IMG/VR virus record: IMGVR_UViG_3300035182_002586
Span: 186,001-250,000 of that record
Reading direction: 5' to 3' (one strand)
Length of the DNA: 64,000 nt
Shown here: positions 5,180-43,045 of the stretch, piece after piece
How positions within the stretch are numbered: position 1 is the first letter of the stretch
Layout: the number at the start of each line of letters is the position of its first letter
Position numbers and translations under genes: made by a program
The notes under the pieces: generated by a model
Seen by the model: only the letters and a program-made list of their open reading frames with translations
The model's database searches: none
What the model was told of the DNA's origin: nothing

Positions 5180-6001
5180 ATGACGTTCCCGGAAGCAGGG
5201 GCCGCCCGCGAGGCATACATCATCGACCAGGTGCGCCAGGGGCGCTTCGAGGTCGAGTTCGCGACCATCACGTCCGACTACAACGGGCACCATGCGGAGT
5301 TCCAGGTCTTCGCGGACGCCCTCAAGGTTGACGGGGTGCGCGTCAACGTGAACGCACAGACGCAGCAGATCATCGCCGACATGACCGGGTGCATGCTGCT
5401 GACCCCGAAGCTCGCGGACCTGATCTGGATGCAGCGTCAGGTGACGTTGCCCCCGATGCCGCGTCCCATCACGTCGGCGACGGCGGCGATGATCGATCAG
5501 TCGAAGAAGATCGACGCAGCCCTCGCGAAGCTCGGGAACCCCAAGGGCCTCATCTGCACGGTCGGCAAGCACTGGGTCATCGACAACGACCTCTCACAGA
5601 CCAAGCTGATCTACGGCGTCCACGGGGCCGAGAACTACGGCTGGCACTTCGAGGGGGCGAGCTACCAGGGCATCGTCGGCGAGCAGATCGCCAGCGGCTT
5701 CAAGGACCCCAATGGACGCGTCTACCGGCTCATCCAGGGCCGTGGGTGGGCGCACAACATGTCCGAGGTCGACTACTCGCAGATCTGCATCTGCGTAGCG
5801 ATCATGTGCAAGGTCGACGGGCAGGACATGGACATCCGGGACCTGCTCCGTGATCCGAATCTCGCCCCCCTCGCCAGCCACAACGGCGTGATGAAGTTCT
5901 TTCGCCAGCCGGGTGTTCCGGAGCCGACCGACCACACGATCATCATGCCGATGATCACGATCACCGCGTCGCCGGGTTCGGACCCGGACACGTCCGCCTG
6001 A
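5180..6001 (+). CDS. uncharacterised enzyme-like protein, candidate cell-wall hydrolase
   Basis: 273 aa with conserved-looking motifs LLTPKLADLIW, GKHWV, NYGWH, IQG.G.AH...DYSQ and DP.LAPL.SH.G. The function is inferred. Confidence 0.6.
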   Translation: MTFPEAGAAREAYIIDQVRQGRFEVEFATITSDYNGHHAEFQVFADALKVDGVRVNVNAQTQQIIADMTGCMLLTPKLADLIWMQRQVTLPPMPRPITSATAAMIDQSKKIDAALAKLGNPKGLICTVGKHWVIDNDLSQTKLIYGVHGAENYGWHFEGASYQGIVGEQIASGFKDPNGRVYRLIQGRGWAHNMSEVDYSQICICVAIMCKVDGQDMDIRDLLRDPNLAPLASHNGVMKFFRQPGVPEPTDHTIIMPMITITASPGSDPDTSA

Positions 6002-14331: not shown

Positions 14332-14979
14332 ATGTCTCATCCACGTCGAATCGAGTGTTTCTTGATCGAGAGCACGAATGACCACTGGGTCTACCTGCGC
14401 CGGTACCGATCGACGTACCCTGAGGCCGGGCAGTGCCCTCGCGCCCCCGGTGCATACCACAACGCCGAAGCCCTGATCAGCGAAATCCAGGCAGAGATGC
14501 CTGTGTCGGGCGACCTGGGTGTGCCCCATGACGACCCGCGGTGGCCTCTCAAGTGTGATCACTGCGCCTACATCTTCCAGCCGGAGGACCAGTGGCAGGT
14601 CAACCACCGGCGGAAGTACGTGCACCAGGCCACAGGGCGAACCTACGCGCTCACCGGCCCCGAGAACTGCAACACAGACAAGTCCATCGACGCCCCCGTT
14701 GGAGCGCTCTGGCGTGCAGACTGGCTCGAAGATCTCGACTGGCGGGGCCCGGACGGCAAGAGCTACATCGTGCGGACACCCGGGGGCGACTGGACCATCG
14801 ATGGCCCGTCCACCACCGGCGGAGGGGTTCGTCAGTCCAAGGAGAGCGGTGGAGGCTGGACGCGCAGCGGGGAAGCACCCCACTTCACCGTCCGTCCCTC
14901 CATCCTGATCGGGAAGCAACCGAACGGGAGCTACACGTACCACGGCTTCATGAACGCCGGGTTCCTCGACGAGTGCTAG
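14332..14979 (+). CDS. Zn-binding protein with C-terminal DUF6527-like segment
   Basis: CDHC, and C-terminal WTRSG..P.FTVRPSILI......YHGF..AG.L resembling DUF6527. Confidence 0.6.
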   Translation: MSHPRRIECFLIESTNDHWVYLRRYRSTYPEAGQCPRAPGAYHNAEALISEIQAEMPVSGDLGVPHDDPRWPLKCDHCAYIFQPEDQWQVNHRRKYVHQATGRTYALTGPENCNTDKSIDAPVGALWRADWLEDLDWRGPDGKSYIVRTPGGDWTIDGPSTTGGGVRQSKESGGGWTRSGEAPHFTVRPSILIGKQPNGSYTYHGFMNAGFLDEC

Positions 14980-15389
14980 GTCTTCGGGGTCTCTACAGGG
15001 TCCCCGGCGAAGGTCAGGGGCTCTCCGTGCGGGTCCCACGGTAGTTGGACCCGCAGACCCTTCTTCTTGCCGTTGCACACGGTGCAACGCTCCAGCACGC
15101 CGCCGATGCACCCATTGTGAGGGACGCGCCCCACCCCCTGACAGGCGCGGCACGGCCCGTTCTCCATTCTGAGGGGGTTGTCCTCGTAGTAGTCGACGAG
15201 ACGTGTAGCTTCCTCCGTCGTCAGGTGGTCGTTGCTGCGAAAGAAGGCGATCGCAGCCTGTGCCCTTTCGTCTCGCCATGCACCCCACACGTGGTCGTAC
15301 TCCGCGAGCACGATCCGGGCGGGCGACCCTTCTGGCTCCAGGGCGATCTTGGCGCGCAGCTCAGTCCACTCGGCTTTGGAGAGGGGCAT
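14976..15389 (-). CDS. hypothetical protein with DnaJ-type CxxCxGxG zinc finger
   Basis: CRACQGVG...CTVCNGK; ATG lies 6 nt after GGTG-TAGAGC. Confidence 0.7.
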   Translation of the reverse strand: MPLSKAEWTELRAKIALEPEGSPARIVLAEYDHVWGAWRDERAQAAIAFFRSNDHLTTEEATRLVDYYEDNPLRMENGPCRACQGVGRVPHNGCIGGVLERCTVCNGKKKGLRVQLPWDPHGEPLTFAGDPVETPKT

Positions 15390-16947: not shown

Positions 16948-18396
16948 CTACTTCGCACTGTACTTCCGAAAGAAGTCGGGGTCTTTGAGGGCAAGGGACA
17001 CCATCTTCGCGCCGAGACGGGAGAGGGCGTGGTCGAACTCGTCCGTCAGATGCCCCCCGTACTCGTGCGACAGCTCGTGGATCAGGAGGTCGTTCACCTC
17101 TTCGGTCGCCCCCCGCTCGAACCACTTCTTGCCGAGGCGGTCGTGATTGAACGTGAGCTGCGCGCCGCCGTAGTTCGCGGCCCACCGGTCCGTCATGCGC
17201 CCTCGCTCGAAGTGCACGTCGACGGAACGGCCGAGGAGCTTCCACGCCAGCTCGTGGGCGTAGGTCGCCAGGTTCGTCATCCCGGGGGTCCACTCGGACT
17301 CGGGGATGTAGCGAGCGTCCCTCGCATCCGGGTCGTTGCTGTAAGGCTTCGGCGTAGGCGCGATGCGCCCCGAGGGAAGGGTAGCGCCAGTGCTACGGAT
17401 GTTCCTCCAGGCGTCCTTCGAGAACGTTCCGCCGGGGATCACTGTGTACCCGTCGGCCACGAGGCGGCGATTCGCCTCCGGATCCGTGGGGTCGAAGATG
17501 GCGCGCTTCTCCCCAAACTGGTGGGTGAGCACCGTGTCCACGGCTTCGGCGACGACACGCTCATCCGCGAGTGCTTCCTGGATCGCCGGGAGTGCGGCCT
17601 GGTCGGGCCGAAGGGTCTCGTGTATCTCGTTCAGCACGAGGACCGCCAGCTCCCGCGCATAGGCGGGAGTCACGTTGTCCCGATCCGAGTTGAGAGGGAT
17701 CTTCTGCATGACCTCGACCGTCCACGGGAGGTCAGTCTCGACGACGGGGATCCCCATCTCGTAGATACGCGAGACGTTATCGATCGGCTCGTACACACGG
17801 ATGGTGGTCTTGCGCGCCGTCTTGCGCAGGTAGCCTTCCGCGTCAGCGATCTCCGTGGGCAACGTGGCCTCGAACGTCCGAAGAGGGGTCCGGATGGGGA
17901 TGACTTCGTTGTTCAGCGTCGTGGGGACCGGAGGAAGCAGCAGCTTCGCGGCCCGGATCACTTGCGCGTACTCGTCGCGCGTCATGCGCAACACGCAGTA
18001 GAAGATAGAGCCTCGTTCGAGATGGTTCCGAACAGGGCGCCGGCCGTTCTTGTCGAAGGCGAAGCCCCCCTTGGTCGAGAGGACCTCGGCCTTCTCGCAT
18101 GCGGCGAGCACGAGCTTCTCGCCGAGGTTGAAACGCCCTCGCTTCGTGGGGTCGCTTTTCTTGTTCGATTCCGCGTACAGCGTGAACGCGTGCGTCAGGT
18201 CCGCGAAGCCATCCGGGTCGTCGTCCTCGACGAGCATCGTCACGAGAGGGCGCCCCTCGACAGGCTCCATCTTCACCGTGACTTTGCTGGTCTTGGTGTC
18301 CCACGCGTTCTGGACCAGCTCGTAGAGGATGAACTCCATCCCCTTACGCTTGAGCAACTTGGCCAGACCCTCACGGTCAACTTCGAACCAACCCAT
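16948..18396 (-). CDS. GHKL-family ATPase with C-terminal HExxH (zincin-like) motif
   Basis: ELVQNAWD (N box), VEDDDPDG (G1), GRFNLGEK (G2); C-terminal LLIHELSH...H...F. Confidence 0.8.
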   Translation of the reverse strand: MGWFEVDREGLAKLLKRKGMEFILYELVQNAWDTKTSKVTVKMEPVEGRPLVTMLVEDDDPDGFADLTHAFTLYAESNKKSDPTKRGRFNLGEKLVLAACEKAEVLSTKGGFAFDKNGRRPVRNHLERGSIFYCVLRMTRDEYAQVIRAAKLLLPPVPTTLNNEVIPIRTPLRTFEATLPTEIADAEGYLRKTARKTTIRVYEPIDNVSRIYEMGIPVVETDLPWTVEVMQKIPLNSDRDNVTPAYARELAVLVLNEIHETLRPDQAALPAIQEALADERVVAEAVDTVLTHQFGEKRAIFDPTDPEANRRLVADGYTVIPGGTFSKDAWRNIRSTGATLPSGRIAPTPKPYSNDPDARDARYIPESEWTPGMTNLATYAHELAWKLLGRSVDVHFERGRMTDRWAANYGGAQLTFNHDRLGKKWFERGATEEVNDLLIHELSHEYGGHLTDEFDHALSRLGAKMVSLALKDPDFFRKYSAK

Positions 18397-21002: not shown

Positions 21003-21779
21003 ATGCCTCGCACAATCGTCTTCGGTGACATCCACGGAATGCTCGACGAGCTACGTCGACTGATCGACGCACTCAAGGTCGAACAGGAGGATCGTCTTGT
21101 CTTCCTCGGAGACCTCATCGACAAGGGCCCGGACTCGCAGGGTGTTGTCCAATTCGTCCGTGAGAACGGGTGGAAGTGTCTCAAAGGCAACCATGAGGAG
21201 ACGGCTCTGCGCTGGCTTCGGCACGAGGAGAAGCACGCTGCGAACCCGAAGTACGAGAACCCGATGAAGATCGGGCCGGACCGGTTCGCACCCTGGCTGA
21301 CCCTCAAGCCCGAGGACGTGGCCTGGCTGCGCACGCTCCCCGTCACCGCCGACCTCGGGGGCGGCACCATCGCGGTGCACGCGGGCTTCATGCCGCGCAT
21401 CCCGATCGACAAGCAGGAGAAGAATCACATCCTGCGGTTGCGGTGGGTCGACGACACCACAGGTAAGCCTGTGCCCATGGACCGCTCCCCCGACGGCATC
21501 AAAGTACCCGAGGGCACCCATCCGTGGATGGAGGTCTGGGACGGCCCTCAGGGGGTCGTCTACGGGCACGTCGTCCACACCCTCGACGTGCCCCGGGTAG
21601 ACATCCGACCCGGTGGGGTCAGAGCGTGGTGTTACGGCATCGACACCGGAGGCGTCCACGGAGGGCGGCTCACGGCCCTCGTCTTCGCAGACGAGACCTC
21701 GGCCCCGCAGATCGTCCAGGTCAACGCTGATCGGGTCTACGTGCCGTTCGGCATCCACGGAAACGGCAAGATGGACTGA
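21003..21779 (+). CDS. calcineurin-like metallophosphoesterase (PPP / PrpE-ApaH-like)
   Basis: GDIHG, GDLIDKG, GNHE, VHAG, YGH, IDTG...G.LTA. Confidence 0.92.
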   Translation: MPRTIVFGDIHGMLDELRRLIDALKVEQEDRLVFLGDLIDKGPDSQGVVQFVRENGWKCLKGNHEETALRWLRHEEKHAANPKYENPMKIGPDRFAPWLTLKPEDVAWLRTLPVTADLGGGTIAVHAGFMPRIPIDKQEKNHILRLRWVDDTTGKPVPMDRSPDGIKVPEGTHPWMEVWDGPQGVVYGHVVHTLDVPRVDIRPGGVRAWCYGIDTGGVHGGRLTALVFADETSAPQIVQVNADRVYVPFGIHGNGKMD

Positions 21780-21791
21780 TCCTGCGTGGGG

Positions 21792-22205
21792 TCAATCCAT
21801 CTTCTGCCTTGGGAAGGTCCTCTGGATCACGTGCACGTGATCTGTGGTAACTCCCATCATCTCGCGGATGATGTTGATCGCAAGCCCCGCGTTGAAGTCC
21901 TTACACGAGAAAGCGTCAAGGCTGAACTTGTTCTGGAGGGGCCATGCGTGGAGCGACAGGTGACTCGTCGAGATCACCTGGATCGACGAAATGCCGCCCT
22001 CATCCTCGAACGTCCCCGTGCGCTTGACGCGTTCGAGTACTTCTGGATCTACCGGGACTTCGTACACTTGCGCCTTGTCGAGGGGCTTCATTTCCAACGC
22101 CTCGACGATCTTCGCGAACAGGTCTTCCAAACGCTCGCGCGTGAAGACCGACGAATCCGCTACGTACGCGTCCATGACGAGGTGGAGCCCGGCCGAGTCT
22201 TTCAT
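21792..22205 (-). CDS. speD: pyruvoyl-dependent S-adenosylmethionine decarboxylase family proenzyme
   Basis: GLHLVMD...GGIS...ISTSHLSLHAWP....SLDAFSCK. Confidence 0.85.
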   Translation of the reverse strand: MKDSAGLHLVMDAYVADSSVFTRERLEDLFAKIVEALEMKPLDKAQVYEVPVDPEVLERVKRTGTFEDEGGISSIQVISTSHLSLHAWPLQNKFSLDAFSCKDFNAGLAINIIREMMGVTTDHVHVIQRTFPRQKMD

Positions 22206-22903
22206 TGAGAGTCTTCCTTTTCCGTACGCGCACGTTTGGCAGCGGCGACTTTAGCCCCGTGGCCCGGAGGCTTAGGGCGTCCCCGTTGATAAGCTCCGAT
22301 CTTCTCTCGGTGTTCATCGGACAACTTCCGCCCCAACATCTTGCCCTTCATCGCAGCAGCGATCTTGGCTCGATGTTCCTCGGACTTTGGTTGCCCTCGT
22401 CGGGCCTGGCTCATTGCAGCTCGACGCTCAGCAGAAAATGGTACGCCTCGGTGTGCCTCAATCAGACTTGTTACATGTTCCACTTGTGCAGGAGATCGAG
22501 GCTTCCCGCGTTGCGCGGCTCCGATCCTCTCCCGATGCGTGGGGGTCAGGGGCTTCCCTTTTAGAGCAGCCGACACCTTTGCCCGACTCTCAGCAGAGAG
22601 AGTCTTACCCCCTCGTCCTCCGCTCTCTATGTTGTACCCAAACTCCGGTTGGTCCGACTTGAAGTAAGACACCCAGTAGCGCTCTCGCTCGTAGGCCGCA
22701 TCCTCAGTGATACACCACTCAAGAACCTTGAACTCAAATTCACTCTGCCCGTACTTCTTTAGAGCACGGCCAATGCAAGTCTCTGGGCAGGTCCGTCGTG
22801 CATCTGTGTGATGAGCACGCCACCGTGTTACGGCGTGATTCGCCTTGCCCACGTAGCGTTTACCAGACGCGCAGTGAGTAATTACGTAGACACAAGGCTT
22901 CAT
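22202..22903 (-). CDS. GIY-YIG homing endonuclease with NUMOD3 repeats
   Basis: VYVIT...YVGKA...RW..H, RALKKYG..EF, GYN...GG, repeated SxEHRxKIxxAxxG. Confidence 0.9.
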   Translation of the reverse strand: MKPCVYVITHCASGKRYVGKANHAVTRWRAHHTDARRTCPETCIGRALKKYGQSEFEFKVLEWCITEDAAYERERYWVSYFKSDQPEFGYNIESGGRGGKTLSAESRAKVSAALKGKPLTPTHRERIGAAQRGKPRSPAQVEHVTSLIEAHRGVPFSAERRAAMSQARRGQPKSEEHRAKIAAAMKGKMLGRKLSDEHREKIGAYQRGRPKPPGHGAKVAAAKRARTEKEDSQ

Positions 22904-22906
22904 GTC

Positions 22907-23530
22907 TCACCAGAAAGCGAAGTTGGCCCCAATGAATGGGTTGGAGCGCAGCTCGGAGAACGTTACGGCGTAGCCGAGATACAACCCGAAGTTTCTGGTG
23001 AGGTCGAGACCAACGCCAGCCCCGAACGACCGGATCCCCACGGCAACGTTGAAGTTCAACGAACGATAGAAAAACGGTTCGACCAGTACACCGACGTCCA
23101 CGGCGTCTGACCACGGGCTGCGCTTGAACGCGTCGAGCCCGAGGACCCCCATGGACGCCTTCACCCGGAAGCGGAACCCGTAGTCCGGCTCCACGTGCTG
23201 TGCAGCGACGATCTTCATGTTCCCGGAGCCGTCGACGCTGTACCCGCACCACGACATATGGAGCTTCCACGGCACGGGCTCTGAGCCGCTCCCGTAGATG
23301 CGGCTGTCCTTGTCCACCACGATGGTGATGGGGTCCACGGTGAAGGTCGGCTTCTCCGTCTGAAGGCAGTGCTTCTCCTTGAGGACCTTCACGAACACGT
23401 CCATGTCCTCTTTGGGCACGCACGTGGACCCCGCAGCGCAAGCTGTGGGCGTGGCAGGGTCACTCGCCCACGCGGCCGAAGAAGTCAGAAGGGCGAGAGC
23501 CGTTACGAGAACGGCTAGGGCGTGACGCAT
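22907..23530 (-). CDS. exported protein with C-terminal amphipathic beta-strands (outer-membrane protein-like)
   Basis: Signal peptide (AWA cleavage), 4 Cys, alternating strands ending GANFAFW with a terminal aromatic residue. Confidence 0.65.
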   Translation of the reverse strand: MRHALAVLVTALALLTSSAAWASDPATPTACAAGSTCVPKEDMDVFVKVLKEKHCLQTEKPTFTVDPITIVVDKDSRIYGSGSEPVPWKLHMSWCGYSVDGSGNMKIVAAQHVEPDYGFRFRVKASMGVLGLDAFKRSPWSDAVDVGVLVEPFFYRSLNFNVAVGIRSFGAGVGLDLTRNFGLYLGYAVTFSELRSNPFIGANFAFW

Positions 23531-23545
23531 GGGGAAGCCTCCCGT

Positions 23546-24454
23546 CTACTTGAATTCGCGGGCGAGGTGGTCGAGCCCGTCGACGAGTGCCCGCGTCTCT
23601 TTCTCGACGCGAAGAATGCCGTCGAGGGCCTTCTTGAGGTGGTCCGCGTGGGCCTTGGCAGCGTGGTCGCCTCCGTGGGCCATCATCGCGACCTCGGACT
23701 GGATGCCCTTGAGGAACTGCTCGCTCTGGTGAGTGCGAGCAAGAGCCTCGTTCATCCACTGGTGCACGTCACGGATGCGGTTCATGACCGAGCTGCCGGC
23801 GTACCGGCGCATCACGCGGACGGGCATCATGTCGGAGGCCGTCTTCACGTCCGCCATCCACGCCTTCGTCTCGCTCACGGTCTCCTGGATGAAGGACATG
23901 ATGCGGTTGGCTTCGTGGAGGATGTTCGCCTTCTCGAAGTCTTTGACGATCTCGTCCGCCATCTCGGCGACCGCGTAGAACGCATCACCCTTCTGCTTGA
24001 GACCGGGCCTGCGCTGATAGTTCTTCGGCAGGAAGCCGCGAGCCTCTTGACCCATGAGGCGCATCATGTTGAGGGCCGTCTGGAGCTTGCGCGTCGCCTC
24101 CTGCATGTCCTTCAGCGACAGCTCGGCGAGAGGTTCGAGCCGGTTCACGGCTGCCGTGCGCTGAGAGGACAGTTTCGGCATGGGAGCCATCTCCGGAGGC
24201 GGGTTGCACTGGTAGCACGAGTCAACGTACTCGGTGCGCTTCGGGCCCTTGCACCGGCACTGCATGGTGTTGCCGCAGGCTAGGCAGATCTTGTTCGTGT
24301 GCTCGTGGACGGGCGCCGGGACGACCTTGTGTTCCTCGCCGGGCTTGCACCTCTCGCACGAGTCCACGTAGACCACGGGGGTCTCGCCGTAGCACTTGCA
24401 CTGCTCGACGATGGCTCGGCAGGTGTTGCACAGGACGTGGTAGTGCCCGTCCAT
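23546..24454 (-). CDS. hypothetical protein with duplicated Cys-rich N-terminal motif
   Basis: Two copies of CxxC...QCxC.G....YVDSCxxC, then a helical region. Confidence 0.75.
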   Translation of the reverse strand: MDGHYHVLCNTCRAIVEQCKCYGETPVVYVDSCERCKPGEEHKVVPAPVHEHTNKICLACGNTMQCRCKGPKRTEYVDSCYQCNPPPEMAPMPKLSSQRTAAVNRLEPLAELSLKDMQEATRKLQTALNMMRLMGQEARGFLPKNYQRRPGLKQKGDAFYAVAEMADEIVKDFEKANILHEANRIMSFIQETVSETKAWMADVKTASDMMPVRVMRRYAGSSVMNRIRDVHQWMNEALARTHQSEQFLKGIQSEVAMMAHGGDHAAKAHADHLKKALDGILRVEKETRALVDGLDHLAREFK

Positions 24455-24456
24455 GA

Positions 24457-25014
24457 TCAACTCCCGCCGTACTTCTTGAGGAGGTCGTCGACGTGCTGAG
24501 CGGAGACCCCGGAGTTGTCCTTCACGGTCACCGCGATCACGTCAGGCTTCACGACGATCACCTTGTCCACGTCTTTGTTCTTCACCCCGTCCGGAAGCTG
24601 CACCTCGACGGGCTTGTCAGAACCCGGAGGCGTGAACGTCACCGTACTCGGGTTCGAGAAGAGTCCTGGGTTCTGGATCGGTACGACCACTGCCTGTGTG
24701 TCCCCCTTCGAGTCGGGGACGCCCACCGGGATGATCTTGCCGTCCTTGTCGACGCGGTTCGGAGGGACGGAGTTGGCAACGTCGATGACGGTCGCCTCCG
24801 GGTCCTTCTTGCCTAGCAGACGAGCCAGCCAGCCACCGATCTGTAGCTCTTTCAGCCCCATCGTGAGCAGGAGCCCTGCCAGGATGATGAGGACGATGGC
24901 CACGATGAGCCCCACGCCGGGAGCCAAGAGCTTCGTGCCGACCCACTTGAGGACGGCCTTCGTCTTCTCCCACGCCGTCGCCCAGAACGAGGGGCTCTCC
25001 TGAGTGTCAGCCAC
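24457..25014 (-). CDS. N-terminally anchored membrane protein (i-spanin-like topology)
   Basis: One long TM (GVGLIVAIVLIILAGLLLTMGL), then a Pro/Val-rich domain; directly downstream of the holin-like gene. Confidence 0.6.
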   Translation of the reverse strand: MADTQESPSFWATAWEKTKAVLKWVGTKLLAPGVGLIVAIVLIILAGLLLTMGLKELQIGGWLARLLGKKDPEATVIDVANSVPPNRVDKDGKIIPVGVPDSKGDTQAVVVPIQNPGLFSNPSTVTFTPPGSDKPVEVQLPDGVKNKDVDKVIVVKPDVIAVTVKDNSGVSAQHVDDLLKKYGGS

Positions 25015-25017
25015 GGC

Positions 25018-25434
25018 TCAGCCCTTCGGAGGCTCCGGGGGCTCCGGGTCCTTGGGGATCGGGATCTCGGCCGGAGCTGCCACCGAGGCTGCGGGCGGCG
25101 TGGAGTCCTTGTCCTTGCCTCCCAGCTCCTTGATGAACTTGCGGAAGTGGACGTAGACCCACCCGCTCGCCAGGCCGCAGATCCCGCCGTACATCACACG
25201 AGCGAGCACGCTGGTGAGGAGCGGCGTCGGCCACGGGAACTTCTTCGACAGTAGGCCGAGAACCATCCCCGTGCCGATGGCACCGAGGGGCAGGAAGATC
25301 CCCGCGTAGTACCGGTTGGTCGGCGCGGCGAGCCACACGGTCTCGACGATGCGTCGGATCGCGTAGGTGAAGACGAACACGCCGAGGCAGAGCAGGCCGG
25401 TCTGCCAGTTCACGAAGGTGGAGAACAGGTCCAT
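25018..25434 (-). CDS. holin-like membrane protein (3 TM)
   Basis: 138 aa, three hydrophobic helices, GLASGWVY followed by a charged C-terminus. Confidence 0.55.
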   Translation of the reverse strand: MDLFSTFVNWQTGLLCLGVFVFTYAIRRIVETVWLAAPTNRYYAGIFLPLGAIGTGMVLGLLSKKFPWPTPLLTSVLARVMYGGICGLASGWVYVHFRKFIKELGGKDKDSTPPAASVAAPAEIPIPKDPEPPEPPKG

Positions 25435-25464
25435 AAGGGGGAAGCCCTTTCACCCCCTACCGGG

Positions 25465-25471
25465 GATAAGA
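25465..25471 (-). promoter_or_regulatory. putative late-promoter motif TCTTATC
   Basis: In the intergenic gap upstream of the holin-like gene. Confidence 0.45.
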
Positions 25472-25486
25472 AAAACAGGGAGATCG

Positions 25487-25756
25487 TCAGTTCTCCTTGA
25501 CTTTGACGCCTTCCGTCAGAGAGACGACGTGACTGGTGGAACGCGTCACGTTGACCTCAGGGTCCAACGAGCTGACGGACAGCTCGCCGGCCTCCCACTT
25601 GTCGATCTCCACGAGCTTGCTGTGGATGGTCGCTGCCTGGTCCGGCGTCAGAACGGGGCTGGAGAGATGGTCGTGGAGGCGCTTACGCGCCACCGCGGCT
25701 GCTTCCCGTCGCTGCTCTACCGGGATGTCCAGGTAGTTCATGTGCTTGACGGCCAT
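25487..25756 (-). CDS. small hypothetical protein
   Basis: ATG 25756 overlaps the upstream stop (TGATG). Confidence 0.7.
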   Translation of the reverse strand: MAVKHMNYLDIPVEQRREAAAVARKRLHDHLSSPVLTPDQAATIHSKLVEIDKWEAGELSVSSLDPEVNVTRSTSHVVSLTEGVKVKEN

Positions 25757-28700
25757 CAGGTCAACCTCGGGCTCAGGATGATGGTCGACGGATCGACCGC
25801 GTAGTGGACGTTGTTGGTCAGCAGCGGGTGCCCTTCGATGCGGTAGAGGTCTGCCGCTGCGGTCCCTTCGGCCGTCCCGTTCGTGCTGATGGCGATGTAG
25901 GAGGTCTTCGGGTTGGTGTCCTTGAGCTGGACGCCGTTCGTGATGACCAGCATCATCAGCTCGTCTCCCGGCGAAACCTCCGTGGCGCCTACGCTGGTGG
26001 GCGCGTTCCGAACGAGGAATGCTCGACCCGTGATGACGTTGGTGTGGCCTGCGGGTGCCTGGATCTGGCCTTGGGCGGCTACGACTTCCCCGCCCGGGTG
26101 CGAACCCGAAGCAGTGAAGGCGGACCCTCCACGGTTCGTCCGGAAGTTGACCAGGAGGGAGTAGTTCCCCTGTTCCCCGTCGACGTGCACCACAACGTCC
26201 CCGGGGGCGCCCGAAGCGGTCGAGGCAGCGTTGAGCGGAGCTTCCGACTGCTCCAGGGCACTCATCTGCGCGAGGCCCGCCATCAGCGTGCCCACGCCCG
26301 TGTTCCCGAGGTAGACGAACGTGCCTGCGGTCCCGTCCCCGAGGCCGAGGCTGCCCCCACGGAAGTCCTTGTCCCTCCACAGGGCGCCGAGCGGGAGACG
26401 CTCAGTGGCCCCTAGGTAGGCAGTATCGGCTTCGATGAGAGTGGCTTCGCCGCTCGCCGCTCCGTCGATCAGCACGCGCGGACGCGCTGCAATCGGAGAG
26501 ACCGGCGGGTAGACAGTGGGATCCTCGTAGCCCACGTTGCGGAAGTCGAAAGCGTTGGTGAGGAGGAGCGTCGGGTTCTTGGTGTCCCCGGAGAAGCGTC
26601 CCGTCCCGAGGGTCGTTGCGAAACCCACAGAGGCGAGGACTTCGAGGACCTTCTGGTTCGGCCGCGTGAGACCGTTCGGGATCAGGTGTGTGGTTGAGAG
26701 CTGGTAGGCGACGCCGCTCGTGAGAGGACCGGGGGCGTACCCGATGTCCGAGTAGCTCGTCTGCGAGCCCCACGCATCCCCCTGGTAGGGCGTACGCGAG
26801 TAGTTGACGACGACCTGATCGGTCCCCGTGGCGGGGCCCGGAAGCACGCTGGTCGGCCCGTTGATGATCGCGTTGACGTTGTTCGTGCGCACCGGGTCGA
26901 CGGCCTGGTTGCGCATCAGCGACGTGCTGGTCGGCCTCGTGAGCACGAGACGGAACTCGTGGTTGAGGTCGAACGAGCCCCGGTCGAAGCCGAAGATCGA
27001 CGACTCGATCACATAGTTCCCGGAAGCGAACGACGTGATCGGGTTGAGGACCGACTTCGAGAGGTCGAGCGCGTCGGCGTTGATGATGAACGTGCTGTCA
27101 CCATCGTCGTCGATCTCGACCCAGAAGGTCGGACCCTGGAAGTCCTGACGGAGCAGGTTGCGTGCGCCCGCGCCAGTGGGTGCACGCGTCGTCGGGTTGT
27201 ATGCCGACCCGTTGGCCTGGTAGTCACCCGCCTCATAGACGGCGAAGAGGCGGGCGATGCCGTAGAACGGCGGCAGTTCGAGGCCCATGCGGCCCAGGCC
27301 CCGGGTGTCCGTGAAGAAGCGGAGACCCGCGAACGTGATGCCACCGAAGGTGAACGCCGCGTTGTACGTCGCCGGGGTGCCCGGCGGGTTGAAGTTGAAC
27401 GTCGAGAAGATCGCGTACGACAGCGATCCGTTCGAGTACGGGACGTAGTTCTTGTCCCCGTCTGTGAAGGACGCGCCCTTCTTCGACAAGCACATGAAGT
27501 TGACGCCCTCAGCGAAGTTCGTGCTGGCCGCGTCCTGCCAGAGAATCGGGCAACGCACCTCGCCCCAACCGGGCACGAGATGCCGCGGAAGGGTCACGTA
27601 TAGGTTGTTGGTGCTCGCCGTGGGGAACGTCGTTCCCGAGAAGAGCTGGAGGGGATCGGTCGTTGCCCACTTCGGCGTGGCCGCATCCGCCTTGAGCAGC
27701 GGCATGAGGTTCTGCGCGTGCGAGAGCGTGTAGTTGACACCCACAGCCACGGGCATCGACGTTGCCAGCGTGAGCTTGGTCACGTCTGCGCCCGGAGCCA
27801 CCGCCGTCACGACGTAGGTTCCGGCTGCCCCACCGAGGGCTACAACGAGAACGTCTCCGATCTGCGTGCCCGCAGTGACGAAGTTCTTCGATGCATCCGT
27901 AAACGTCGTGGAACCAGCGCCGACACCCACAGTACCCGTCGTGAAAGACGTCGGGGCGACGTTGGCCGAGGTGCCGTCCATGGTCCGGAACTCGGTCGGC
28001 CACACGATGCGACGGAACGGCTGGAGGATGACCGTCTTCGAGCCGAGGTCCCCGTAGGTCTCTGCGGTCGAGGGTAGCGAGTTCTTGTACATCGCGCTCC
28101 GGTACTTCGACCAGAGCGGTGCCCACGTGATCCTCGTTGGCAGGTTCGTCGGCACGACCCCCGACTGCTGGAGAAGCAGCTCGGTGCTCGGGCTGATGTA
28201 GTTGACCGAGTGCATCGAGTCCGGCTTGCGGGAGAGACCGCGCCCTGCCCCGTACACGACGTGCGCCGTGATGTAGAGCTGGTTGCCGGTTGCCGGGAAG
28301 CTCGGTCCGAGCGTGATCACGAGGTCGTCGTTCGGCCCCGGGTTCGCCGGAGTCACCGTGTACAGTGACGCGGACACCGGGGTCGTCTGACCATCGACGC
28401 GGATGTCGACCGCGTGTGCGTACCCATCGTTGACGAAGCGCACCTGATCGGCGTCACCACCCGGGAGTCCGCTCTTGAACTGCGAAATCGGGATGGAGAG
28501 CACGTCGTTCGGAGAGAACACGCTCGGCGTTGCACGCGTCGTGTGCGTGACCGTCAGCGACAAGGACCACCCGACGTTGGACGGGGAAGGAACGGCCACG
28601 CCGTTGGCCTTCGCGATCAGCTCGACCGGCTGCAACGCAGCCGCGTCCGAGAAGATCATGCGGATGTCGTCGGCGCCGTCGAGACGAGTCACGCCGAGAG

Positions 28701-30096
28701 CAACACCACTGCCGACCGAAGCGATCTTGTCCTGGTACGCGACGAACGGACCCTGCGGCCCCGCGCCCGAGCGTTTCCAGTTGGCGCGGAGCTGTCCGCG
28801 CACGAGCTTGTCGAGGTTCGTTCGAAGCATCGCCTCGTAGTCGAACCCGTTCGGGTTGATCGCGTGGCGGAGATCGAGCACGTCGGTCGACGCGATCTGG
28901 TCCGAGAAGAGACCGTCAGGACGGCCTGACATGACCACGACCGGAGTGCCCGCTGCGTGCGTCTCGGCGCGGGTGCCGTTGACGCCACGGATCACGCCCG
29001 TGACGTTCGTACCCGTGATGCCCGCGTACGTCATCAGCTCGTCGCCGACCTTGATGAGGACCGGGAATGCAGGCGTCGCCGGGAGCGGCACCCCCGAGGA
29101 GGACGCCAGAACGAACGTCGTCGCAGCGGCCGTGATGGACGAAGCGAGCGTCGGAACCGTCGAGAACGTTAGGATTCCGGTTCGGTCGACCGCGAGCGGG
29201 TTCCGGTTGAACGCGCCGTTGAGGTTCTGGCTCGGGTCTCCCGACCAGGCCACGCCGTTGCGACGGAAGACGGCGGCGATCGGGATGGCGTACGTGTAGC
29301 CGTCGACCGTGCCGAGAGCGTTCGAGGTTCCATCCCCAGCTCGCCACAGACCGGGATCCCCCAGCGTGGTGCGCATGTTCTGGAAGATGAATGACGTCGG
29401 AGAAGCCGCAGCGCCCTGCGCCTTGACGATCGCCGGGTCGAAGCCGTCCGGGTTGCTCGTGAGACCCACGAGCCCCTTCGCGACACGGATGCGGTACTGG
29501 AGCTGGAGCCTCTGCGTCGTCTCGAAGCCGATGGCCGGATCGACGAGATCATCGGGGAGGAACGCGAAGCCACCCTCGACGTTGCCGTAGCGCCAGATGG
29601 CGGACCCTGCCGGCTTGTTCGTGGTCGACGGGTTCGGCGGGATACGCGCGACCCACGCCTCCAGGAACACGAAGTCGACTCGGAAGTCACCGCTGTTCGC
29701 GGGCGGGGGATCGAGAGCGATCACGTTCGTCGTGTCGCTGTTGTTCGGTGCACCGGGAGGCGTACCCGTACGCGTGCCTGCGACGGGGATGAGCCACCCG
29801 TTGACCGCAGCCCACATGACCGATTGGGTTTCGCCCGTGCGCTGACGTCCGAAGCGGAGCCAGTTCGACCACGCGGGGTTCGTCTGGAAGTCCGACGGGA
29901 GACTGGTTTCGTTGCCAAGCCAACCAGACGGGGTGTCTCGGAGGGCGCCCGTTCGGTGCTCCTCGTTCGAGATCTGCTGGAGGAAGTTCAACTCGGAGTC
30001 GAGCGGCGGCTTCCCTTCCTGCCAGAGAACCTGGAGGAATGCAGTACCTTGAGGGGCAAGAACCCGGGAGACCCCACCACCGAAGTTGTCGGTCAT
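25756..30096 (-). CDS. large virion structural protein (baseplate/tail-associated, DUF4815-like N-terminus)
   Basis: 1446 aa, G/T/P-rich and beta-rich. N-terminal WQEGKPPLDSELN; the first ~450 aa are paralogous to 43042-45630. Confidence 0.7.
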   Translation of the reverse strand: MTDNFGGGVSRVLAPQGTAFLQVLWQEGKPPLDSELNFLQQISNEEHRTGALRDTPSGWLGNETSLPSDFQTNPAWSNWLRFGRQRTGETQSVMWAAVNGWLIPVAGTRTGTPPGAPNNSDTTNVIALDPPPANSGDFRVDFVFLEAWVARIPPNPSTTNKPAGSAIWRYGNVEGGFAFLPDDLVDPAIGFETTQRLQLQYRIRVAKGLVGLTSNPDGFDPAIVKAQGAAASPTSFIFQNMRTTLGDPGLWRAGDGTSNALGTVDGYTYAIPIAAVFRRNGVAWSGDPSQNLNGAFNRNPLAVDRTGILTFSTVPTLASSITAAATTFVLASSSGVPLPATPAFPVLIKVGDELMTYAGITGTNVTGVIRGVNGTRAETHAAGTPVVVMSGRPDGLFSDQIASTDVLDLRHAINPNGFDYEAMLRTNLDKLVRGQLRANWKRSGAGPQGPFVAYQDKIASVGSGVALGVTRLDGADDIRMIFSDAAALQPVELIAKANGVAVPSPSNVGWSLSLTVTHTTRATPSVFSPNDVLSIPISQFKSGLPGGDADQVRFVNDGYAHAVDIRVDGQTTPVSASLYTVTPANPGPNDDLVITLGPSFPATGNQLYITAHVVYGAGRGLSRKPDSMHSVNYISPSTELLLQQSGVVPTNLPTRITWAPLWSKYRSAMYKNSLPSTAETYGDLGSKTVILQPFRRIVWPTEFRTMDGTSANVAPTSFTTGTVGVGAGSTTFTDASKNFVTAGTQIGDVLVVALGGAAGTYVVTAVAPGADVTKLTLATSMPVAVGVNYTLSHAQNLMPLLKADAATPKWATTDPLQLFSGTTFPTASTNNLYVTLPRHLVPGWGEVRCPILWQDAASTNFAEGVNFMCLSKKGASFTDGDKNYVPYSNGSLSYAIFSTFNFNPPGTPATYNAAFTFGGITFAGLRFFTDTRGLGRMGLELPPFYGIARLFAVYEAGDYQANGSAYNPTTRAPTGAGARNLLRQDFQGPTFWVEIDDDGDSTFIINADALDLSKSVLNPITSFASGNYVIESSIFGFDRGSFDLNHEFRLVLTRPTSTSLMRNQAVDPVRTNNVNAIINGPTSVLPGPATGTDQVVVNYSRTPYQGDAWGSQTSYSDIGYAPGPLTSGVAYQLSTTHLIPNGLTRPNQKVLEVLASVGFATTLGTGRFSGDTKNPTLLLTNAFDFRNVGYEDPTVYPPVSPIAARPRVLIDGAASGEATLIEADTAYLGATERLPLGALWRDKDFRGGSLGLGDGTAGTFVYLGNTGVGTLMAGLAQMSALEQSEAPLNAASTASGAPGDVVVHVDGEQGNYSLLVNFRTNRGGSAFTASGSHPGGEVVAAQGQIQAPAGHTNVITGRAFLVRNAPTSVGATEVSPGDELMMLVITNGVQLKDTNPKTSYIAISTNGTAEGTAAADLYRIEGHPLLTNNVHYAVDPSTIILSPRLT

Positions 30097-30325: not shown

Positions 30326-31348
30326 ATGACCAAGACCAAGACCCTCTTCGTAGCGGTGACTTCAGCAATTCTCGCGGCCTGTTCAGGTGGTAACTTCGAC
30401 GTCGCGCCGGGGGACGACGACTCGGCCACGCTGGACACCGGAGCGGAGATCGAGACCCTCCCCAACATCGATGCCCCCGAGGTCGGGGACACCGGGACCG
30501 ACACGGGCGCCTCTGAGGCCGGGGACACCGGGACGATCGACAGCGCTCCCGAGGCCGGGGACACCGGGTCGGATACGGGTGCCTCTGAGGCCGGGGACAC
30601 CGGGACCGACACGGGCGCCTCTGAGGTCGGGGACACCGGGGTGGCCGACAGCGCTCCCGAGGCCGGGGACACCGGGACCGACACCGGGATGGTCGACTCG
30701 GGGGTGGTGGCCGACTCCGGCGACTCCGGCGACTCCGGCCCTCCCTGTACAGAGTGGACGAGGCGGTGCGTGGGGATGCAGTTGGAGCAGTGCGTTAGCA
30801 CGAGCGACGGTGGTACGAGCGATAGTGGCACGAGTAGCACTGCGTGGGTGACCATTGGCGGCCTCTGTAACTACGCCTGCCTCGACGCCACGAGCACGAA
30901 GAGGGCCACGTGCGCGTGCGATGCACCTCTCGGACGCTTCTCGACGGTCGCGGACACCAAGTCGCCCGACGGGTACGCCATCAAGGACACGAAGACCGGC
31001 CTCACGTGGGCCGACAGCGACATCAAAGCGTCGTTGTCGGGGATCTCGTTGGCGTGCGCCTCTTACGGAAAAGGCGGATGGCGCGTGCCCACGAAGGCCG
31101 AGTGGGAAGCCATCCTAGGGCAGGTCACGGGTCCTGTTCCGTACACTACGAACTACGCGCAGGTCTCGTGTTACGGGCCGGACGCCCCTCCCGTGTTCAA
31201 GTTCCCTGTGACTACAACGTCCCCTCTGACGCAGTACTGGTCGAGTGATTCGACGCCCACGGGCACGCCTCTGGTCATCGACATCTACTACGGAGAGTGG
31301 GTCACGGCGCCGGCCTCGTCGAACCAGCTCCGCTGCGTCCACGATTGA
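30326..31348 (+). CDS. lipoprotein with DTG-repeat stalk, Cys-rich segment and DUF1566/Lcl (C-type-lectin-fold) C-terminal domain
   Basis: Lipobox LAAC; KDTKTGLTW...AC...GWRVPTKAEW...YWSS...LRCV. Confidence 0.8.
   Translation: MTKTKTLFVAVTSAILAACSGGNFDVAPGDDDSATLDTGAEIETLPNIDAPEVGDTGTDTGASEAGDTGTIDSAPEAGDTGSDTGASEAGDTGTDTGASEVGDTGVADSAPEAGDTGTDTGMVDSGVVADSGDSGDSGPPCTEWTRRCVGMQLEQCVSTSDGGTSDSGTSSTAWVTIGGLCNYACLDATSTKRATCACDAPLGRFSTVADTKSPDGYAIKDTKTGLTWADSDIKASLSGISLACASYGKGGWRVPTKAEWEAILGQVTGPVPYTTNYAQVSCYGPDAPPVFKFPVTTTSPLTQYWSSDSTPTGTPLVIDIYYGEWVTAPASSNQLRCVHD
30479..30694 (+). repeat. six in-frame 36-bp tandem repeats (EAGDTGTDTGAS-like)
   Basis: Units start at 30479, 30515, 30551, 30587, 30623 and 30659, each with GAGGYCGGGGACACCGGG. 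Confidence 0.9.
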
Positions 31349-42308: not shown

Positions 42309-43045
42309 TAGCCCACCATGCTCGACGTTTGAAGTGTGTCCCTACGGGCAGCCCGGAACGAAGGAATACTCTTACCCCTTCGACACATGCTCACGGCAGA
42401 TCGGGTGACTCCAGCAAGCACCGCGACCTTAGCGTCAGACATCGTTCCAACAAGTGCGTGCCACTCCCGAACGAGTCTGAGATCTGCGGGGTACTCCACA
42501 CCTCTTGCAGTTTCATCGAAAACGGATAGCAGGACCTCAGAGTACCCGTTCTTCGTCTGCCTCGTGTTGGTGTTCGTTCGTACGCGATGGCAGTTCGCAC
42601 AAACAAGGTGGCACTTAGCAACCTCTCGTCGAAGCTCTTCGAGAGTGTGTCGAAGAAGCCAGCTCACATGCGTGGTCTTCTCCGCTACGTGATCGAAGTC
42701 CATCTGGCAGGACTTCAAGTTCCTACCGCAGTCTGCACAAGGGAGTCGTTCTTTCAGGGTGTCTACGATTGCTCGGTGGTACTTGTACGTTCTCGTGTGG
42801 TAGCTGTGGTCACCTTTGTATGTACGGAGCCTGTGGCAACAAGCACACACAAGATCGCACTTTGCAACCTCCGCTAGTACGACGGACCAGTCTGCGTAGA
42901 GGTACAGCCAAGAGATCTTCTTGATCTTCAAGGCCCTATCTCGGTGATCAAAGTCCATTGCACACGACGCGAACGAGTGCCCACAGTCCTGGCAAGGCCC
43001 GGCTTTCAACGCAGCTAGAGCTTCCCTTCGTTCGCTGGGGGTCAT
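42308..43045 (-). CDS. HNH endonuclease with two tandem HNH domains and C-terminal HTH
   Basis: 2x (CxDC...MDFDH...KC.LVCAxCHR.RT), then SDAKVAVLAGVTRSAV; lower GC; overlaps both neighbours. Confidence 0.85.
   Translation of the reverse strand: MTPSERREALAALKAGPCQDCGHSFASCAMDFDHRDRALKIKKISWLYLYADWSVVLAEVAKCDLVCACCHRLRTYKGDHSYHTRTYKYHRAIVDTLKERLPCADCGRNLKSCQMDFDHVAEKTTHVSWLLRHTLEELRREVAKCHLVCANCHRVRTNTNTRQTKNGYSEVLLSVFDETARGVEYPADLRLVREWHALVGTMSDAKVAVLAGVTRSAVSMCRRGKSIPSFRAARRDTLQTSSMVG

What the first reader, a model, noticed from the sequence alone, without database searches (positions are those of the whole stretch)
22907..25471. Putative non-canonical lysis cassette: holin, inner-membrane anchor and beta-barrel-type outer-membrane partner
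Behind a late motif lie a 3-TM holin-like gene, a type II membrane protein, a Cys-rich protein, and an exported non-lipoprotein ending in beta-strands and FAFW. The holin-like ATG abuts an AGGGGG/CCCCCT hairpin (25436-25458), reminiscent of lambda S translational control. Known o-spanins and u-spanins are lipoproteins. An i-spanin-like protein paired with a BAM-inserted beta-protein would be a new way to disrupt the outer membrane. No recognisable endolysin is adjacent (see 5180-6001).
Basis: inference. Interest (0 to 1): 0.6.

Follow-up and report, generated by a model that had tools for sequence, protein, structure and literature searches.

The report
Huge-phage envelope module, probable lysis genes
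A giant (529 kb) uncultured phage carries, behind its tail-fibre gene, a small three-helix membrane protein and a tightly coupled pair of an inner-membrane-anchored protein and an exported beta-barrel-type protein. The pair is conserved across a whole clade of huge phages, and in one small relative it is fused into one gene right behind a lysozyme gene, so it may be a new way for phages to break the outer membrane; this is not proven.

Summary
The genes are real and as described: 3-TM protein (25018-25434, -), N-terminally anchored protein (24457-25014), Cys-rich protein (23546-24460) and signal-peptide protein ending FAFW (22907-23530). All have strong coding signatures. The window lies in a 529-kb phage genome.

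The anchored protein and the OMP-like protein are adjacent in 21 of 21 related big-phage loci, directly after a 1,100-1,540-aa tail-fibre-like gene. Seven distant clusters fuse them into one polypeptide. In one 10.7-kb contig the fused gene overlaps the 3' end of a GH25 muramidase gene, after an ORF ending in a TM helix: a holin-endolysin-X layout.

The 3-TM gene is present in only part of the clade, has only weak holin signals, and is once fused to a J domain. The Cys-rich gene is an orphan insert. The AGGGGG/CCCCCT hairpin exists but is no more stable than shuffles and is not conserved.

No canonical spanin turned up in the genome. A GH25 gene lies 81 kb from the cassette.

Against the lysis reading: no coiled coil, a 6-strand barrel model, conflicting topology evidence, a solo homologue in a P4-like element, and no verdict from the complex prediction. 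Lysis function: about 0.45.

The parts
25018..25434 (-). 138-aa small membrane protein with 3 predicted TM segments, N-out/C-in, and a Pro/charge-rich cytoplasmic tail. Holin-like candidate.
   Evidence: ORF and GC3 0.91. Family alignment A4 has invariant T23, R27, E31, G56, P69, G83, G87, Y94. 5 of 8 members hit phrog_1299 'holin' weakly, best E 0.0017, but that profile rings in 10/14 control genomes. Language-model neighbours include Phage_holin_5 clusters at 0.88. Fused to a J-domain protein in L007:5261-6994. Not detected in L014, L015, L019, L020, L031, L033 or L034.
24457..25014 (-). 185-aa bitopic membrane protein: N-terminal amphipathic helix, one TM (about 34-56), then a highly conserved ~120-aa beta/extended domain ending in a short helix (DDLLKKYG). 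Candidate inner-membrane partner.
   Evidence: More than 350 homologues at about 60% identity. 119 clusters at 50% identity in 1.8 billion representatives. AF2 pLDDT 69.7, no coiled coil. As conserved as the SNF2 helicase, DnaB and PolA of the same phages. Positive-inside tally is weakly N-in.
22907..23530 (-). 207-aa Sec-exported protein: signal peptide, N-domain with two conserved Cys pairs, and a C-terminal Gly-rich 6-strand beta domain with a uniformly hydrophobic face, ending FAFW. Candidate outer-membrane partner.
   Evidence: Alignment A1 has invariant C55 and C95, nearly invariant C31 and C37, and invariant R120, R122, K124, D176. AF2 pLDDT 84.6. VIA: designed barrel Z 9.2, designed TM barrel 5.8, OprF/OmpA/OmpW/PagL/CarO/TamA 4-5. 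3/31 members hit PF13505 weakly. Always next to the anchored-protein gene and fused to it in 7 clusters.
23546..24460 (-). Cys-rich, mostly helical cytoplasmic protein (304 aa as listed from TTG 24460; likely start ATG 24454) with two 6-Cys zinc-ribbon-like repeats. An insert, not part of the conserved module.
   Evidence: No homologue in any related locus or elsewhere in the genome. Relatives have nothing, or unrelated inserts, at this place.
25487..25756 (-). 89-aa conserved small soluble protein (MAVKHMNYLDIP...) between the tail-fibre-like gene and the 3-TM gene. Its start overlaps the stop of the 1446-aa gene (TGATG).
   Evidence: Sequence. Homologues in L003, L004, L006, L008, L017 and L019. 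No Pfam family.
25436..25486 (-). Intergenic region upstream of the 3-TM gene: T-run after a weak terminator-like hairpin, a T-rich...TAT element, and the AGGGGG/CCCCCT inverted repeat.
   Evidence: The repeat is not conserved and not unusually stable.
25756..30096 (-). 1446-aa tail-fibre-like structural protein. The module always follows its orthologue.
   Evidence: Weak phrog_1101 tail protein, E 4e-8. 49-66% identical orthologues precede the pair in all big-phage loci.
22202..22903 (-). GIY-YIG/NUMOD3 homing endonuclease inserted between the OMP-like gene and the AdoMet decarboxylase gene.
   Evidence: Pfam and PHROG hits. In L004 and L006 the AdoMet_dc gene directly follows the OMP-like gene.

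Best explanation
The region is a conserved late-expressed envelope module of a clade of huge phages, and it most likely serves host lysis.

Shown:
- The obligate core is a translationally coupled gene pair: a bitopic inner-membrane protein (185 aa) and a Sec-exported, disulfide-bearing protein (207 aa).
- The C-terminus of the exported protein has the sequence logic of an outer-membrane beta-barrel: hydrophobic outside, Gly/polar inside, aromatic end.
- The two proteins occur either as neighbours or as one fused chain.
- One fused copy occupies the spanin position behind a GH25 endolysin gene.

Inferred:
- The anchored protein's conserved domain lies in the periplasm and binds the N-domain of the exported protein.
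- This gives an IM-to-OM bridge that is held in check by peptidoglycan.
- After a holin (probably the 138-aa 3-TM protein in this sub-clade) lets the distant GH25 enzyme destroy the wall, the bridge destabilises or fuses the outer membrane.
- On this reading it is a spanin equivalent built from an anchor plus a barrel protein instead of a coiled coil plus a lipoprotein.

The Cys-rich gene and the hairpin are not part of the mechanism.
For: - The pair is adjacent, often with overlapping stop/start, in 21/21 big-phage loci from 37 to 64% GC.
- There are seven fusion clusters, two of them direct fusions with precise domain boundaries.
- L012 reads: ORF ending in a TM helix, then GH25 (E 4.8e-29), then the fused gene overlapping GH25 by 40 nt, then a recombinase on the other strand.
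- The signal peptide and conserved Cys pairs place the 207-aa protein outside the cytoplasm, so it cannot be a virion part.
- The barrel-type C-terminus is supported.
- The 3-TM protein has class-I holin topology and weak holin leads from two methods.
- No small lipoprotein or embedded o-spanin was found in 529 kb.
- A GH25 candidate endolysin is present in the genome.
- The module lies at the end of the late structural block behind a terminator-like site and a semi-conserved upstream element.
Against: - The anchored protein has no predicted coiled coil and no Cys.
- Five fusion clusters keep a signal-peptide-like segment between the two domains, with no internal start codon. That fits a cytoplasmic, not periplasmic, anchored domain.
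- The positive-inside tally favours N-in only weakly: 51 against 24.
- The barrel model has 6 strands, and the C-terminal residue is N or H in divergent clades.
- A solo homologue sits in a P4-like integrative element without lysis genes.
- The 3-TM gene is missing in divergent clades and is fused or adjacent to J-domain proteins in others.
- The phrog_1299 profile is unspecific.
- Endolysin adjacency rests on a single contig.
Confidence: 0.45

Rival explanations
1. Superinfection exclusion or receptor masking. The anchored protein and the exported barrel-type protein sit in the envelope of the infected cell. There they block entry of related phages, or mask the receptor so that progeny are not lost on debris, as T5 Llp does. 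Llp is encoded beside the receptor-binding protein gene.
For: The pair always lies directly after, sometimes overlapping, the tail-fibre-like gene. A solo homologue with a classical N-terminal signal anchor lies in the accessory region of a P4-like element next to the integrase, a typical place for interference genes. Lipoprotein genes share the neighbourhood in several clades.
Against: Exclusion genes are usually patchy and fast-evolving. This pair is universal and as conserved as the replication enzymes. It does not co-vary visibly with the fibre protein. The fused copy sits behind an endolysin gene, not a fibre gene.
Confidence: 0.2
2. A chaperone-linked envelope module unrelated to lysis. 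The 3-TM protein is a membrane anchor that recruits a J-domain protein and host Hsp70. The anchored protein's conserved domain is cytoplasmic. The exported protein is a separate outer-membrane or periplasmic factor made from the same transcript, for example for envelope remodelling during a long infection.
For: A 3-TM::J-domain fusion occurs in L007, and J-domain genes are interleaved in three other loci. Five fusion clusters have an intact internal signal peptide and no internal start; these work naturally only if the anchored domain is cytoplasmic. The anchored protein is very highly conserved.
Against: The two direct fusions lack any hydrophobic segment between the domains, and one retains the conserved Cys pair; they make no sense if the domains lie on opposite sides of the membrane. 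In this genome the J-domain genes lie 85-109 kb away. This rival does not explain the GH25 adjacency.
Confidence: 0.2
3. The genes are independent membrane proteins kept together only by conserved synteny at the end of the structural block. There is no complex and no common function.
For: The complex prediction gave no verdict. Neighbouring genes in this region are syntenic in general.
Against: Repeated independent fusions of exactly these two proteins. Adjacency persists in clades where everything else around them has changed.
Confidence: 0.1
4. Virion components, such as ejection or tail-associated membrane-active proteins encoded after the fibre gene.
For: Position directly behind the tail-fibre-like gene. 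Ejection proteins often carry TM segments.
Against: The 207-aa protein has a cleavable Sec signal peptide and conserved disulfide Cys pairs in 31/31 homologues, so it leaves the cytoplasm where virions assemble. The 3-TM and anchored proteins have no structural-protein matches.
Confidence: 0.05

Closest known systems
Two-component spanins (lambda Rz/Rz1; Kongari et al. 2018, PMC6139136)
   Same: Adjacent or overlapping genes for an inner-membrane-anchored protein and an outer-membrane-targeted protein. Both two-gene and single-chain forms exist. One copy sits behind an endolysin gene. Late expression context.
   Different: The outer partner has no lipobox; it has a signal-peptidase-I site and a beta-barrel-type C-terminus. 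The inner partner has no coiled coil and no Cys. There is no sequence or fold similarity. Function is untested.
Unimolecular spanin (T1 gp11)
   Same: The fused forms (P0195, P0244) would link both membranes in one chain.
   Different: Polarity is reversed: a membrane anchor at the N-terminus and a barrel at the C-terminus, instead of an N-terminal lipoprotein and a C-terminal TM segment. No lipobox.
Class I holins (lambda S; Pfam Phage_holin_5 families, phrog_1299/1129)
   Same: Small protein, three TM segments, N-out/C-in, charged cytoplasmic tail, end of late operon.
   Different: Only sub-threshold and unspecific profile matches. No dual-start motif. Once fused to a J domain. Absent from part of the clade.
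Small outer-membrane beta-barrels (OmpA/OprF N-domain, OmpX/Ail/Lom, OmpW, PagL)
   Same: Signal peptide, amphipathic Gly-rich strands with a hydrophobic outer face and a polar inner face, aromatic C-terminus. Weak structural matches (Z 4-5) and weak PF13505 hits.
   Different: Only six strands are predicted, with an additional disulfide-bonded N-domain. The best structural match is a designed six-strand barrel. The terminal residue is not always aromatic.
T4-type scattered lysis genes
   Same: The endolysin (here GH25 at G000:292.7 kb) is far from the holin and spanin candidates.
   Different: No homology to T4 t, e or pseT.3/pseT.2.
Disruptin (phiKT gp28, bioRxiv 10.1101/515445)
   Same: An alternative to spanins for the outer-membrane step in a phage without spanins.
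   Different: Disruptin is a small cationic peptide. Here there are two structured, membrane-targeted proteins.

Membership tests
Two-component spanin | i-spanin: N-terminal TM segment with a periplasmic C-terminal domain (type II) | tested here: inconclusive
   There is one TM segment. The positive-inside tally is weakly N-in. Direct fusions to the exported protein support a periplasmic domain; signal-peptide-containing fusions argue against it.
Two-component spanin | i-spanin periplasmic domain is mainly coiled-coil alpha-helix | tested here: not met
   The AF2 model shows short strands and extended segments after residue 66 and only one short terminal helix.
Two-component spanin | o-spanin is a lipoprotein with a lipobox and a Cys at +1 | tested here: not met
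   The signal peptide ends AWA|SD, and there is no lipobox in any of 31 homologues.
Two-component spanin | The two genes are embedded, overlapping or adjacent | tested here: met
   Adjacent in 21/21 big-phage loci, often overlapping. In the window they are separated only by an orphan insert.
Two-component spanin | Located in a lysis cassette with the endolysin or holin | tested here: inconclusive
   The window has a holin-like gene upstream but no endolysin. In L012 the fused gene overlaps a GH25 gene. That is a single example.
Two-component spanin | Needed for outer-membrane disruption; mutants arrest as spherical cells | not testable with these tools
   Needs genetics or complementation.
Class I holin | Small protein with three TM segments, N-out/C-in, and a charged C-terminal tail | tested here: met
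   Hydropathy and alignment A4. A cytoplasmic C-terminus is implied by the in-frame J-domain fusion in L007.
Class I holin | Significant match to a curated holin family | tested here: not met
   No Pfam family. phrog_1299 E 0.0017-0.0034 only, and that profile rings in 10/14 control genomes. Atlas score 0.88, below 0.9.
Class I holin (lambda S type regulation) | Dual-start motif with an RNA structure that sets the holin/antiholin ratio | tested here: not met
   There is a single Met start in all 8 members. The hairpin has z = -0.08 and is not conserved.
BAM-dependent outer-membrane beta-barrel protein | Cleavable Sec signal peptide | tested here: met
   31/31 homologues have n-h-c regions and an AxA-type site.
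BAM-dependent outer-membrane beta-barrel protein | C-terminal beta-signal ending in an aromatic residue | tested here: inconclusive
   The family ends in F-x-F or F-x-F-W. Divergent clades end ...FSFN...SFN or ...ALH.
BAM-dependent outer-membrane beta-barrel protein | Closed barrel of at least 8 membrane-spanning strands | tested here: not met
   There are six long strands in the high-confidence C-terminal domain, and the best match is a designed small barrel. An oligomeric barrel is not excluded.
Unimolecular spanin | N-terminal lipoprotein signal and C-terminal TM segment in one chain | tested here: not met
   The fused forms have an N-terminal anchor and a C-terminal beta domain.

The most novel reading that the evidence does not exclude
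A third architectural class of phage outer-membrane disruptors. It consists of an inner-membrane anchor and a Sec-exported, non-lipoprotein mini beta-barrel protein, found as two genes or as one fused chain. It would replace spanins throughout a large clade of uncultured huge phages and, rarely, in small temperate elements.
Probability: 0.35. Interest if true: 0.8.

Novelty: new variant of a known kind. Interest (0 to 1): 0.62.

Why it matters
About 15% of phages of Gram-negative hosts have no recognisable spanin (bioRxiv 10.1101/515445). How huge phages lyse their hosts is essentially unknown. If this pair does the outer-membrane step, it shows that the IM-OM bridge solution evolved a second time with a barrel-type protein instead of a lipoprotein. 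It would also give an annotation handle for more than 100 protein clusters in huge-phage genomes. Finally, it offers a short natural single-chain version (273 aa, L012) that can be tested directly in laboratory strains. If the pair is not lytic, it is still a universal, unexplained envelope module of this clade.

Tried and rejected
- Complex prediction of 185-aa (56-185) with 207-aa (23-207): no verdict, ipSAE 0.29 and 0.01. This is not evidence either way.
- Foldseek against PDB for the 207-aa model: nothing at E <= 0.001.
- VIA search for the 185-aa model: only generic long-helix matches.
- Profile searches of A1 and A2 against PDB sequences: nothing.
- GenBank phages: megablast of the region, and tblastn with five family members, found no match.
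- GTDB genomes: no relative of the anchored protein, so the 'provirus' label gets no support.
- IMG/VR and JGI metagenome scans for relatives of the L012 fusion: none.
- Several alignments were too diverse to scan with.
- Own-genome searches for Phage_lysozyme, Amidase_2, GH19, GH108, Peptidase_M15_4, M15_3 and PG_binding_1: none.
- The SLT domain lies in a 632-aa protein next to a 1171-aa protein. I read this as a virion lysin, by inference.
- There is a weak, interrupted M23 match at G000:116313.
- A TM plus coiled-coil protein at G000:147733-148221 looks i-spanin-like but has no lipoprotein partner.
- A 112-aa Pro/Cys-rich lipoprotein at G000:404455 is not in a lysis context.
- TonB/ExbB-type reading: rejected. 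The 3-TM protein lacks the large loop, the anchor has no TM Asp, and there are no family matches.
- T4 holin-T-type reading of the 185-aa protein: no family match.
Full report
**Setting.** The window is bases 186001-250000 of a single 528,957-bp virus record with 64% GC. IMG/VR labels it 'provirus', and CheckV rates it 100% complete. Proteins identical to those of the window occur on a 620-kb contig. Nothing similar exists in GenBank phages, and there is no relative in GTDB genomes. This is an uncultured huge phage. The region of the finding lies at the end of a block of very large minus-strand structural genes of 2460, 1838, 1647 and 1446 aa.

**Observation.** All four ORFs exist at the stated coordinates and have the coding signature of this genome: GC3 0.82-0.91, GC2 0.39-0.49.
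- The 138-aa product has three hydrophobic segments and a Pro/charge-rich tail.
- The 185-aa product has one TM segment. AF2 gives an amphipathic helix at 10-30, a long helix at 34-66, then short strands; mean pLDDT is 69.7.
- The 304-aa product has two copies of a 6-Cys motif and a helical rest.
- The 207-aa product has a signal peptide (AWA|SD), an N-domain, six long C-terminal strands and ends FAFW; pLDDT is 84.6.

The region folds no better than shuffled sequence (z = -0.08), and the minimum-energy fold uses other pairings. That segment is missing in six relatives, and no member of the 3-TM family has a dual start. What is semi-conserved upstream of the 3-TM gene is a T-rich...TAT(GGGC) element 25-35 nt before the start. 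It follows a weak terminator-like hairpin at the end of a small conserved gene, 25487-25756.

**What is conserved.** The 207-aa protein has 31 homologues of about 200 aa. All of them carry the signal peptide, invariant C55 and C95, nearly invariant C31 and C37, and an F-x-F(-W) end. The 185-aa protein has more than 350 homologues at about 60% identity. A profile search of 1.8 billion representatives finds 119 clusters, almost all 150-190 aa with the same layout.

Across the first seven loci the gene order recurs (L002 holds only part of it):
- a roughly 2400-aa gene;
- a roughly 210-aa gene;
- a roughly 1450-aa tail-fibre-like gene;
- a small soluble protein;
- the 3-TM protein;
- optional inserts;
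- the anchored protein;
- optional inserts;
- the OMP-like protein;
- then AdoMet decarboxylase or replication genes.

Fourteen further IMG/VR loci from contigs of 52-452 kb and 37-62% GC all show the anchored-protein gene immediately followed by the OMP-like gene. The pair usually has overlapping stop and start, and it lies directly after the fibre-like gene. In total the pair is adjacent in 21 of 21 big-phage loci.

The 3-TM gene is found in only part of them. It was not detected in L014, L015, L019, L020, L031, L033 or L034, some of which have a Gly-rich lipoprotein gene at that place. The Cys-rich gene has no homologue anywhere. Relatives carry other inserts there, several with J domains. 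Against six related loci, the anchored protein (56-67% identity) is at least as conserved as the fibre-like protein, SNF2 helicase, DnaB and PolA. The OMP-like protein is 44-61% identical and the 3-TM protein 31-49%.

**Fusions.** Seven of the 119 clusters are single chains that match both family profiles.
- Two are direct fusions. P0244 loses only the signal peptide and the first Cys loop. P0195 also loses the terminal helix of the anchored protein and the first helix of the OMP-like protein.
- Five (P0216, P0230, P0236, P0251, P0273) keep a signal-peptide-like segment, with a short hydrophobic core and small residues at -1 and -3, between the domains. In L013 there is no start codon at that junction. 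P0273 lies in the usual big-phage synteny.

These fusions show that the two proteins work together. They disagree on topology. The direct fusions require both domains on the same side of the membrane; that side is the periplasm, given the signal peptide and Cys pairs of the free form. The signal-peptide-type fusions work most naturally if the anchored domain is cytoplasmic and signal peptidase separates the two parts. A positive-inside tally over 102 sequences is only weakly N-in: 51 against 24, with 27 ties. I favour a periplasmic domain but regard this as open.

**Link to lysis.** P0195 lies on a 10.7-kb contig (L012). The order there is:
- a 5'-truncated ORF ending in a hydrophobic helix;
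- a 219-aa GH25 muramidase (Pfam E 4.8e-29) that overlaps it by 4 nt;
- the 273-aa fusion, overlapping the GH25 gene by 40 nt;
- a serine recombinase on the other strand.

This is the holin-endolysin-spanin layout of a temperate phage, with the fusion in the spanin place.

In the window's own genome no T4-type lysozyme, amidase, GH19, GH108, M15 or PG_binding_1 was found. It does have a GH25 gene at G000:292723-293220 (E 7.5e-20; likely gene 292648-293418), 29% identical to the L012 enzyme. Beside it is an exported 252-aa protein whose 'SHESGF' motif looks to me like a lytic transglycosylase motif; this was not tested against any family. The lysis genes would therefore be scattered, as in T4.

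A scan of every possible start in all six frames found no small lipoprotein that could be an o-spanin. It found only lipoproteins of 280-340 aa. A TM plus coiled-coil protein at G000:147733-148221 has no lipoprotein partner.

**The holin candidate.** Topology, size and tail fit a class I holin. Five of eight family members hit phrog_1299 ('holin') and two hit phrog_1129, all sub-threshold. Language-model neighbours include Phage_holin_5 clusters at 0.88 with 185-188 shared features. However, phrog_1299 rings in 10 of 14 control genomes, archaea included. There is no Pfam match. In L007 the 3-TM protein is fused in frame to a J-domain protein, and J-domain genes follow it in two other loci. In this genome the J-domain genes are far away.

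**The barrel.** One face of all six strands is uniformly hydrophobic. The other face is Gly-rich with invariant R120, R122, K124, D176 and Asn residues (my reading of the sequence). That is the pattern of a membrane barrel rather than a soluble one.

The structural matches are:
- a designed small barrel, Z 9.2;
- a designed TM barrel, Z 5.8;
- OprF, OmpA, OmpW, PagL, CarO and TamA, Z 4-5.

Atlas neighbours are viral hypotheticals, then PagL and OMP_b-brl families. Three of 31 members touch PF13505 weakly. Six strands are fewer than in any known monomeric OMP, so an oligomeric barrel or a non-canonical insertion must be assumed. Divergent clades end in N or H after the F-x-F.

**Counter-evidence and rivals.**
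- A solo 133-aa homologue with a classical MKK signal anchor lies between a D5-type primase and a tyrosine integrase in a P4-like element, with no OMP-like partner. This fits an interference or exclusion role better than lysis.
- The constant position behind the fibre gene recalls T5 llp beside its receptor-binding protein gene (my knowledge).
- The J-domain links and the signal-peptide-type fusions support a reading in which the anchored domain is cytoplasmic.
- The complex prediction gave no verdict.

**Verdict.** I put about 0.45 on a lysis role with the pair as a spanin equivalent, 0.2 each on exclusion/masking and on a chaperone-linked non-lytic module, and the rest on independent genes or virion parts.

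Noticed in passing
Genome-wide, e.g. window 2479-3390, 3403-3897, 14976-15389 and 16948-18396 (G000 188479-204396); none in the structural block G000 205-283 kb: The motif CGGTGTA(G/C) sits at a fixed 9-12 nt upstream of the start codon of about 50 genes (73 hits within 120 nt of starts). It is strongly enriched upstream of genes (CGGTGTAGA: 21 of 30 genomic copies). It looks like an early/middle promoter or initiation element giving very short leaders. A second enriched motif is GATGGATCGG.
   Followed up: partly
L007:5261-6994; also the 202.9-kb contig that carries P0012 (genes listed, no DNA held), L008:5710-7008 and L003:6335-7528: J-domain (DnaJ) proteins are interleaved with the module in relatives, and once a J-domain protein is fused in frame to the 3-TM protein. 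In this genome J-domain genes lie at G000:126411-126563 and G000:102511-102624.
   Followed up: partly
L025:5001-5402 (also L026-L028): A solo 133-aa homologue of the anchored protein lies in a P4-like integrative element (D5-type primase, tyrosine integrase), without an OMP-like partner.
   Followed up: partly
window 30326-31348 (+): A 340-aa lipoprotein (LAAC lipobox) with acidic DTGT repeats and a weak Lcl_C domain is divergent from the fibre-like gene. A 55%-identical paralogue lies at G000:169490-170401. Unrelated Gly-rich, Cys-rich lipoproteins occupy the place before the pair in L014, L015 and L034.
   Followed up: partly
G000:292648-293418 (+) and G000:294044-294802 (-), outside the window: A GH25 muramidase (candidate endolysin) and, next to it, an exported 252-aa protein with a 'SHESGF' motif that I read as lytic-transglycosylase-like (not tested). 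A separate SLT domain lies in a 632-aa protein at G000:272911-274809, beside a 1171-aa protein.
   Followed up: partly
window 22202-22903, 42308-43045 and 45627-46451 (all -): Homing endonucleases (one GIY-YIG/NUMOD3, two HNH) are inserted between conserved genes. The GIY-YIG gene has a lower GC3 than its neighbours and is absent at this place in L004 and L006. Relatives carry inteins in DnaB and PolA.
   Followed up: no
window 21792-22205 (-) and 21003-21779 (+): An S-adenosylmethionine decarboxylase and a NinI-like metallophosphatase flank the module. The AdoMet_dc gene follows the OMP-like gene in L004 and L006 too.
   Followed up: no
Whole record G000: IMG/VR calls the 529-kb record a provirus cut from a 620-kb contig, yet no relative of its most conserved module protein occurs in 185,579 GTDB species genomes. 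In relatives the replication genes follow the module directly, whereas here they lie at G000 318-327 kb, so the genome is rearranged.
   Followed up: partly
Nothing marks it as an endolysin.
   Followed up: partly
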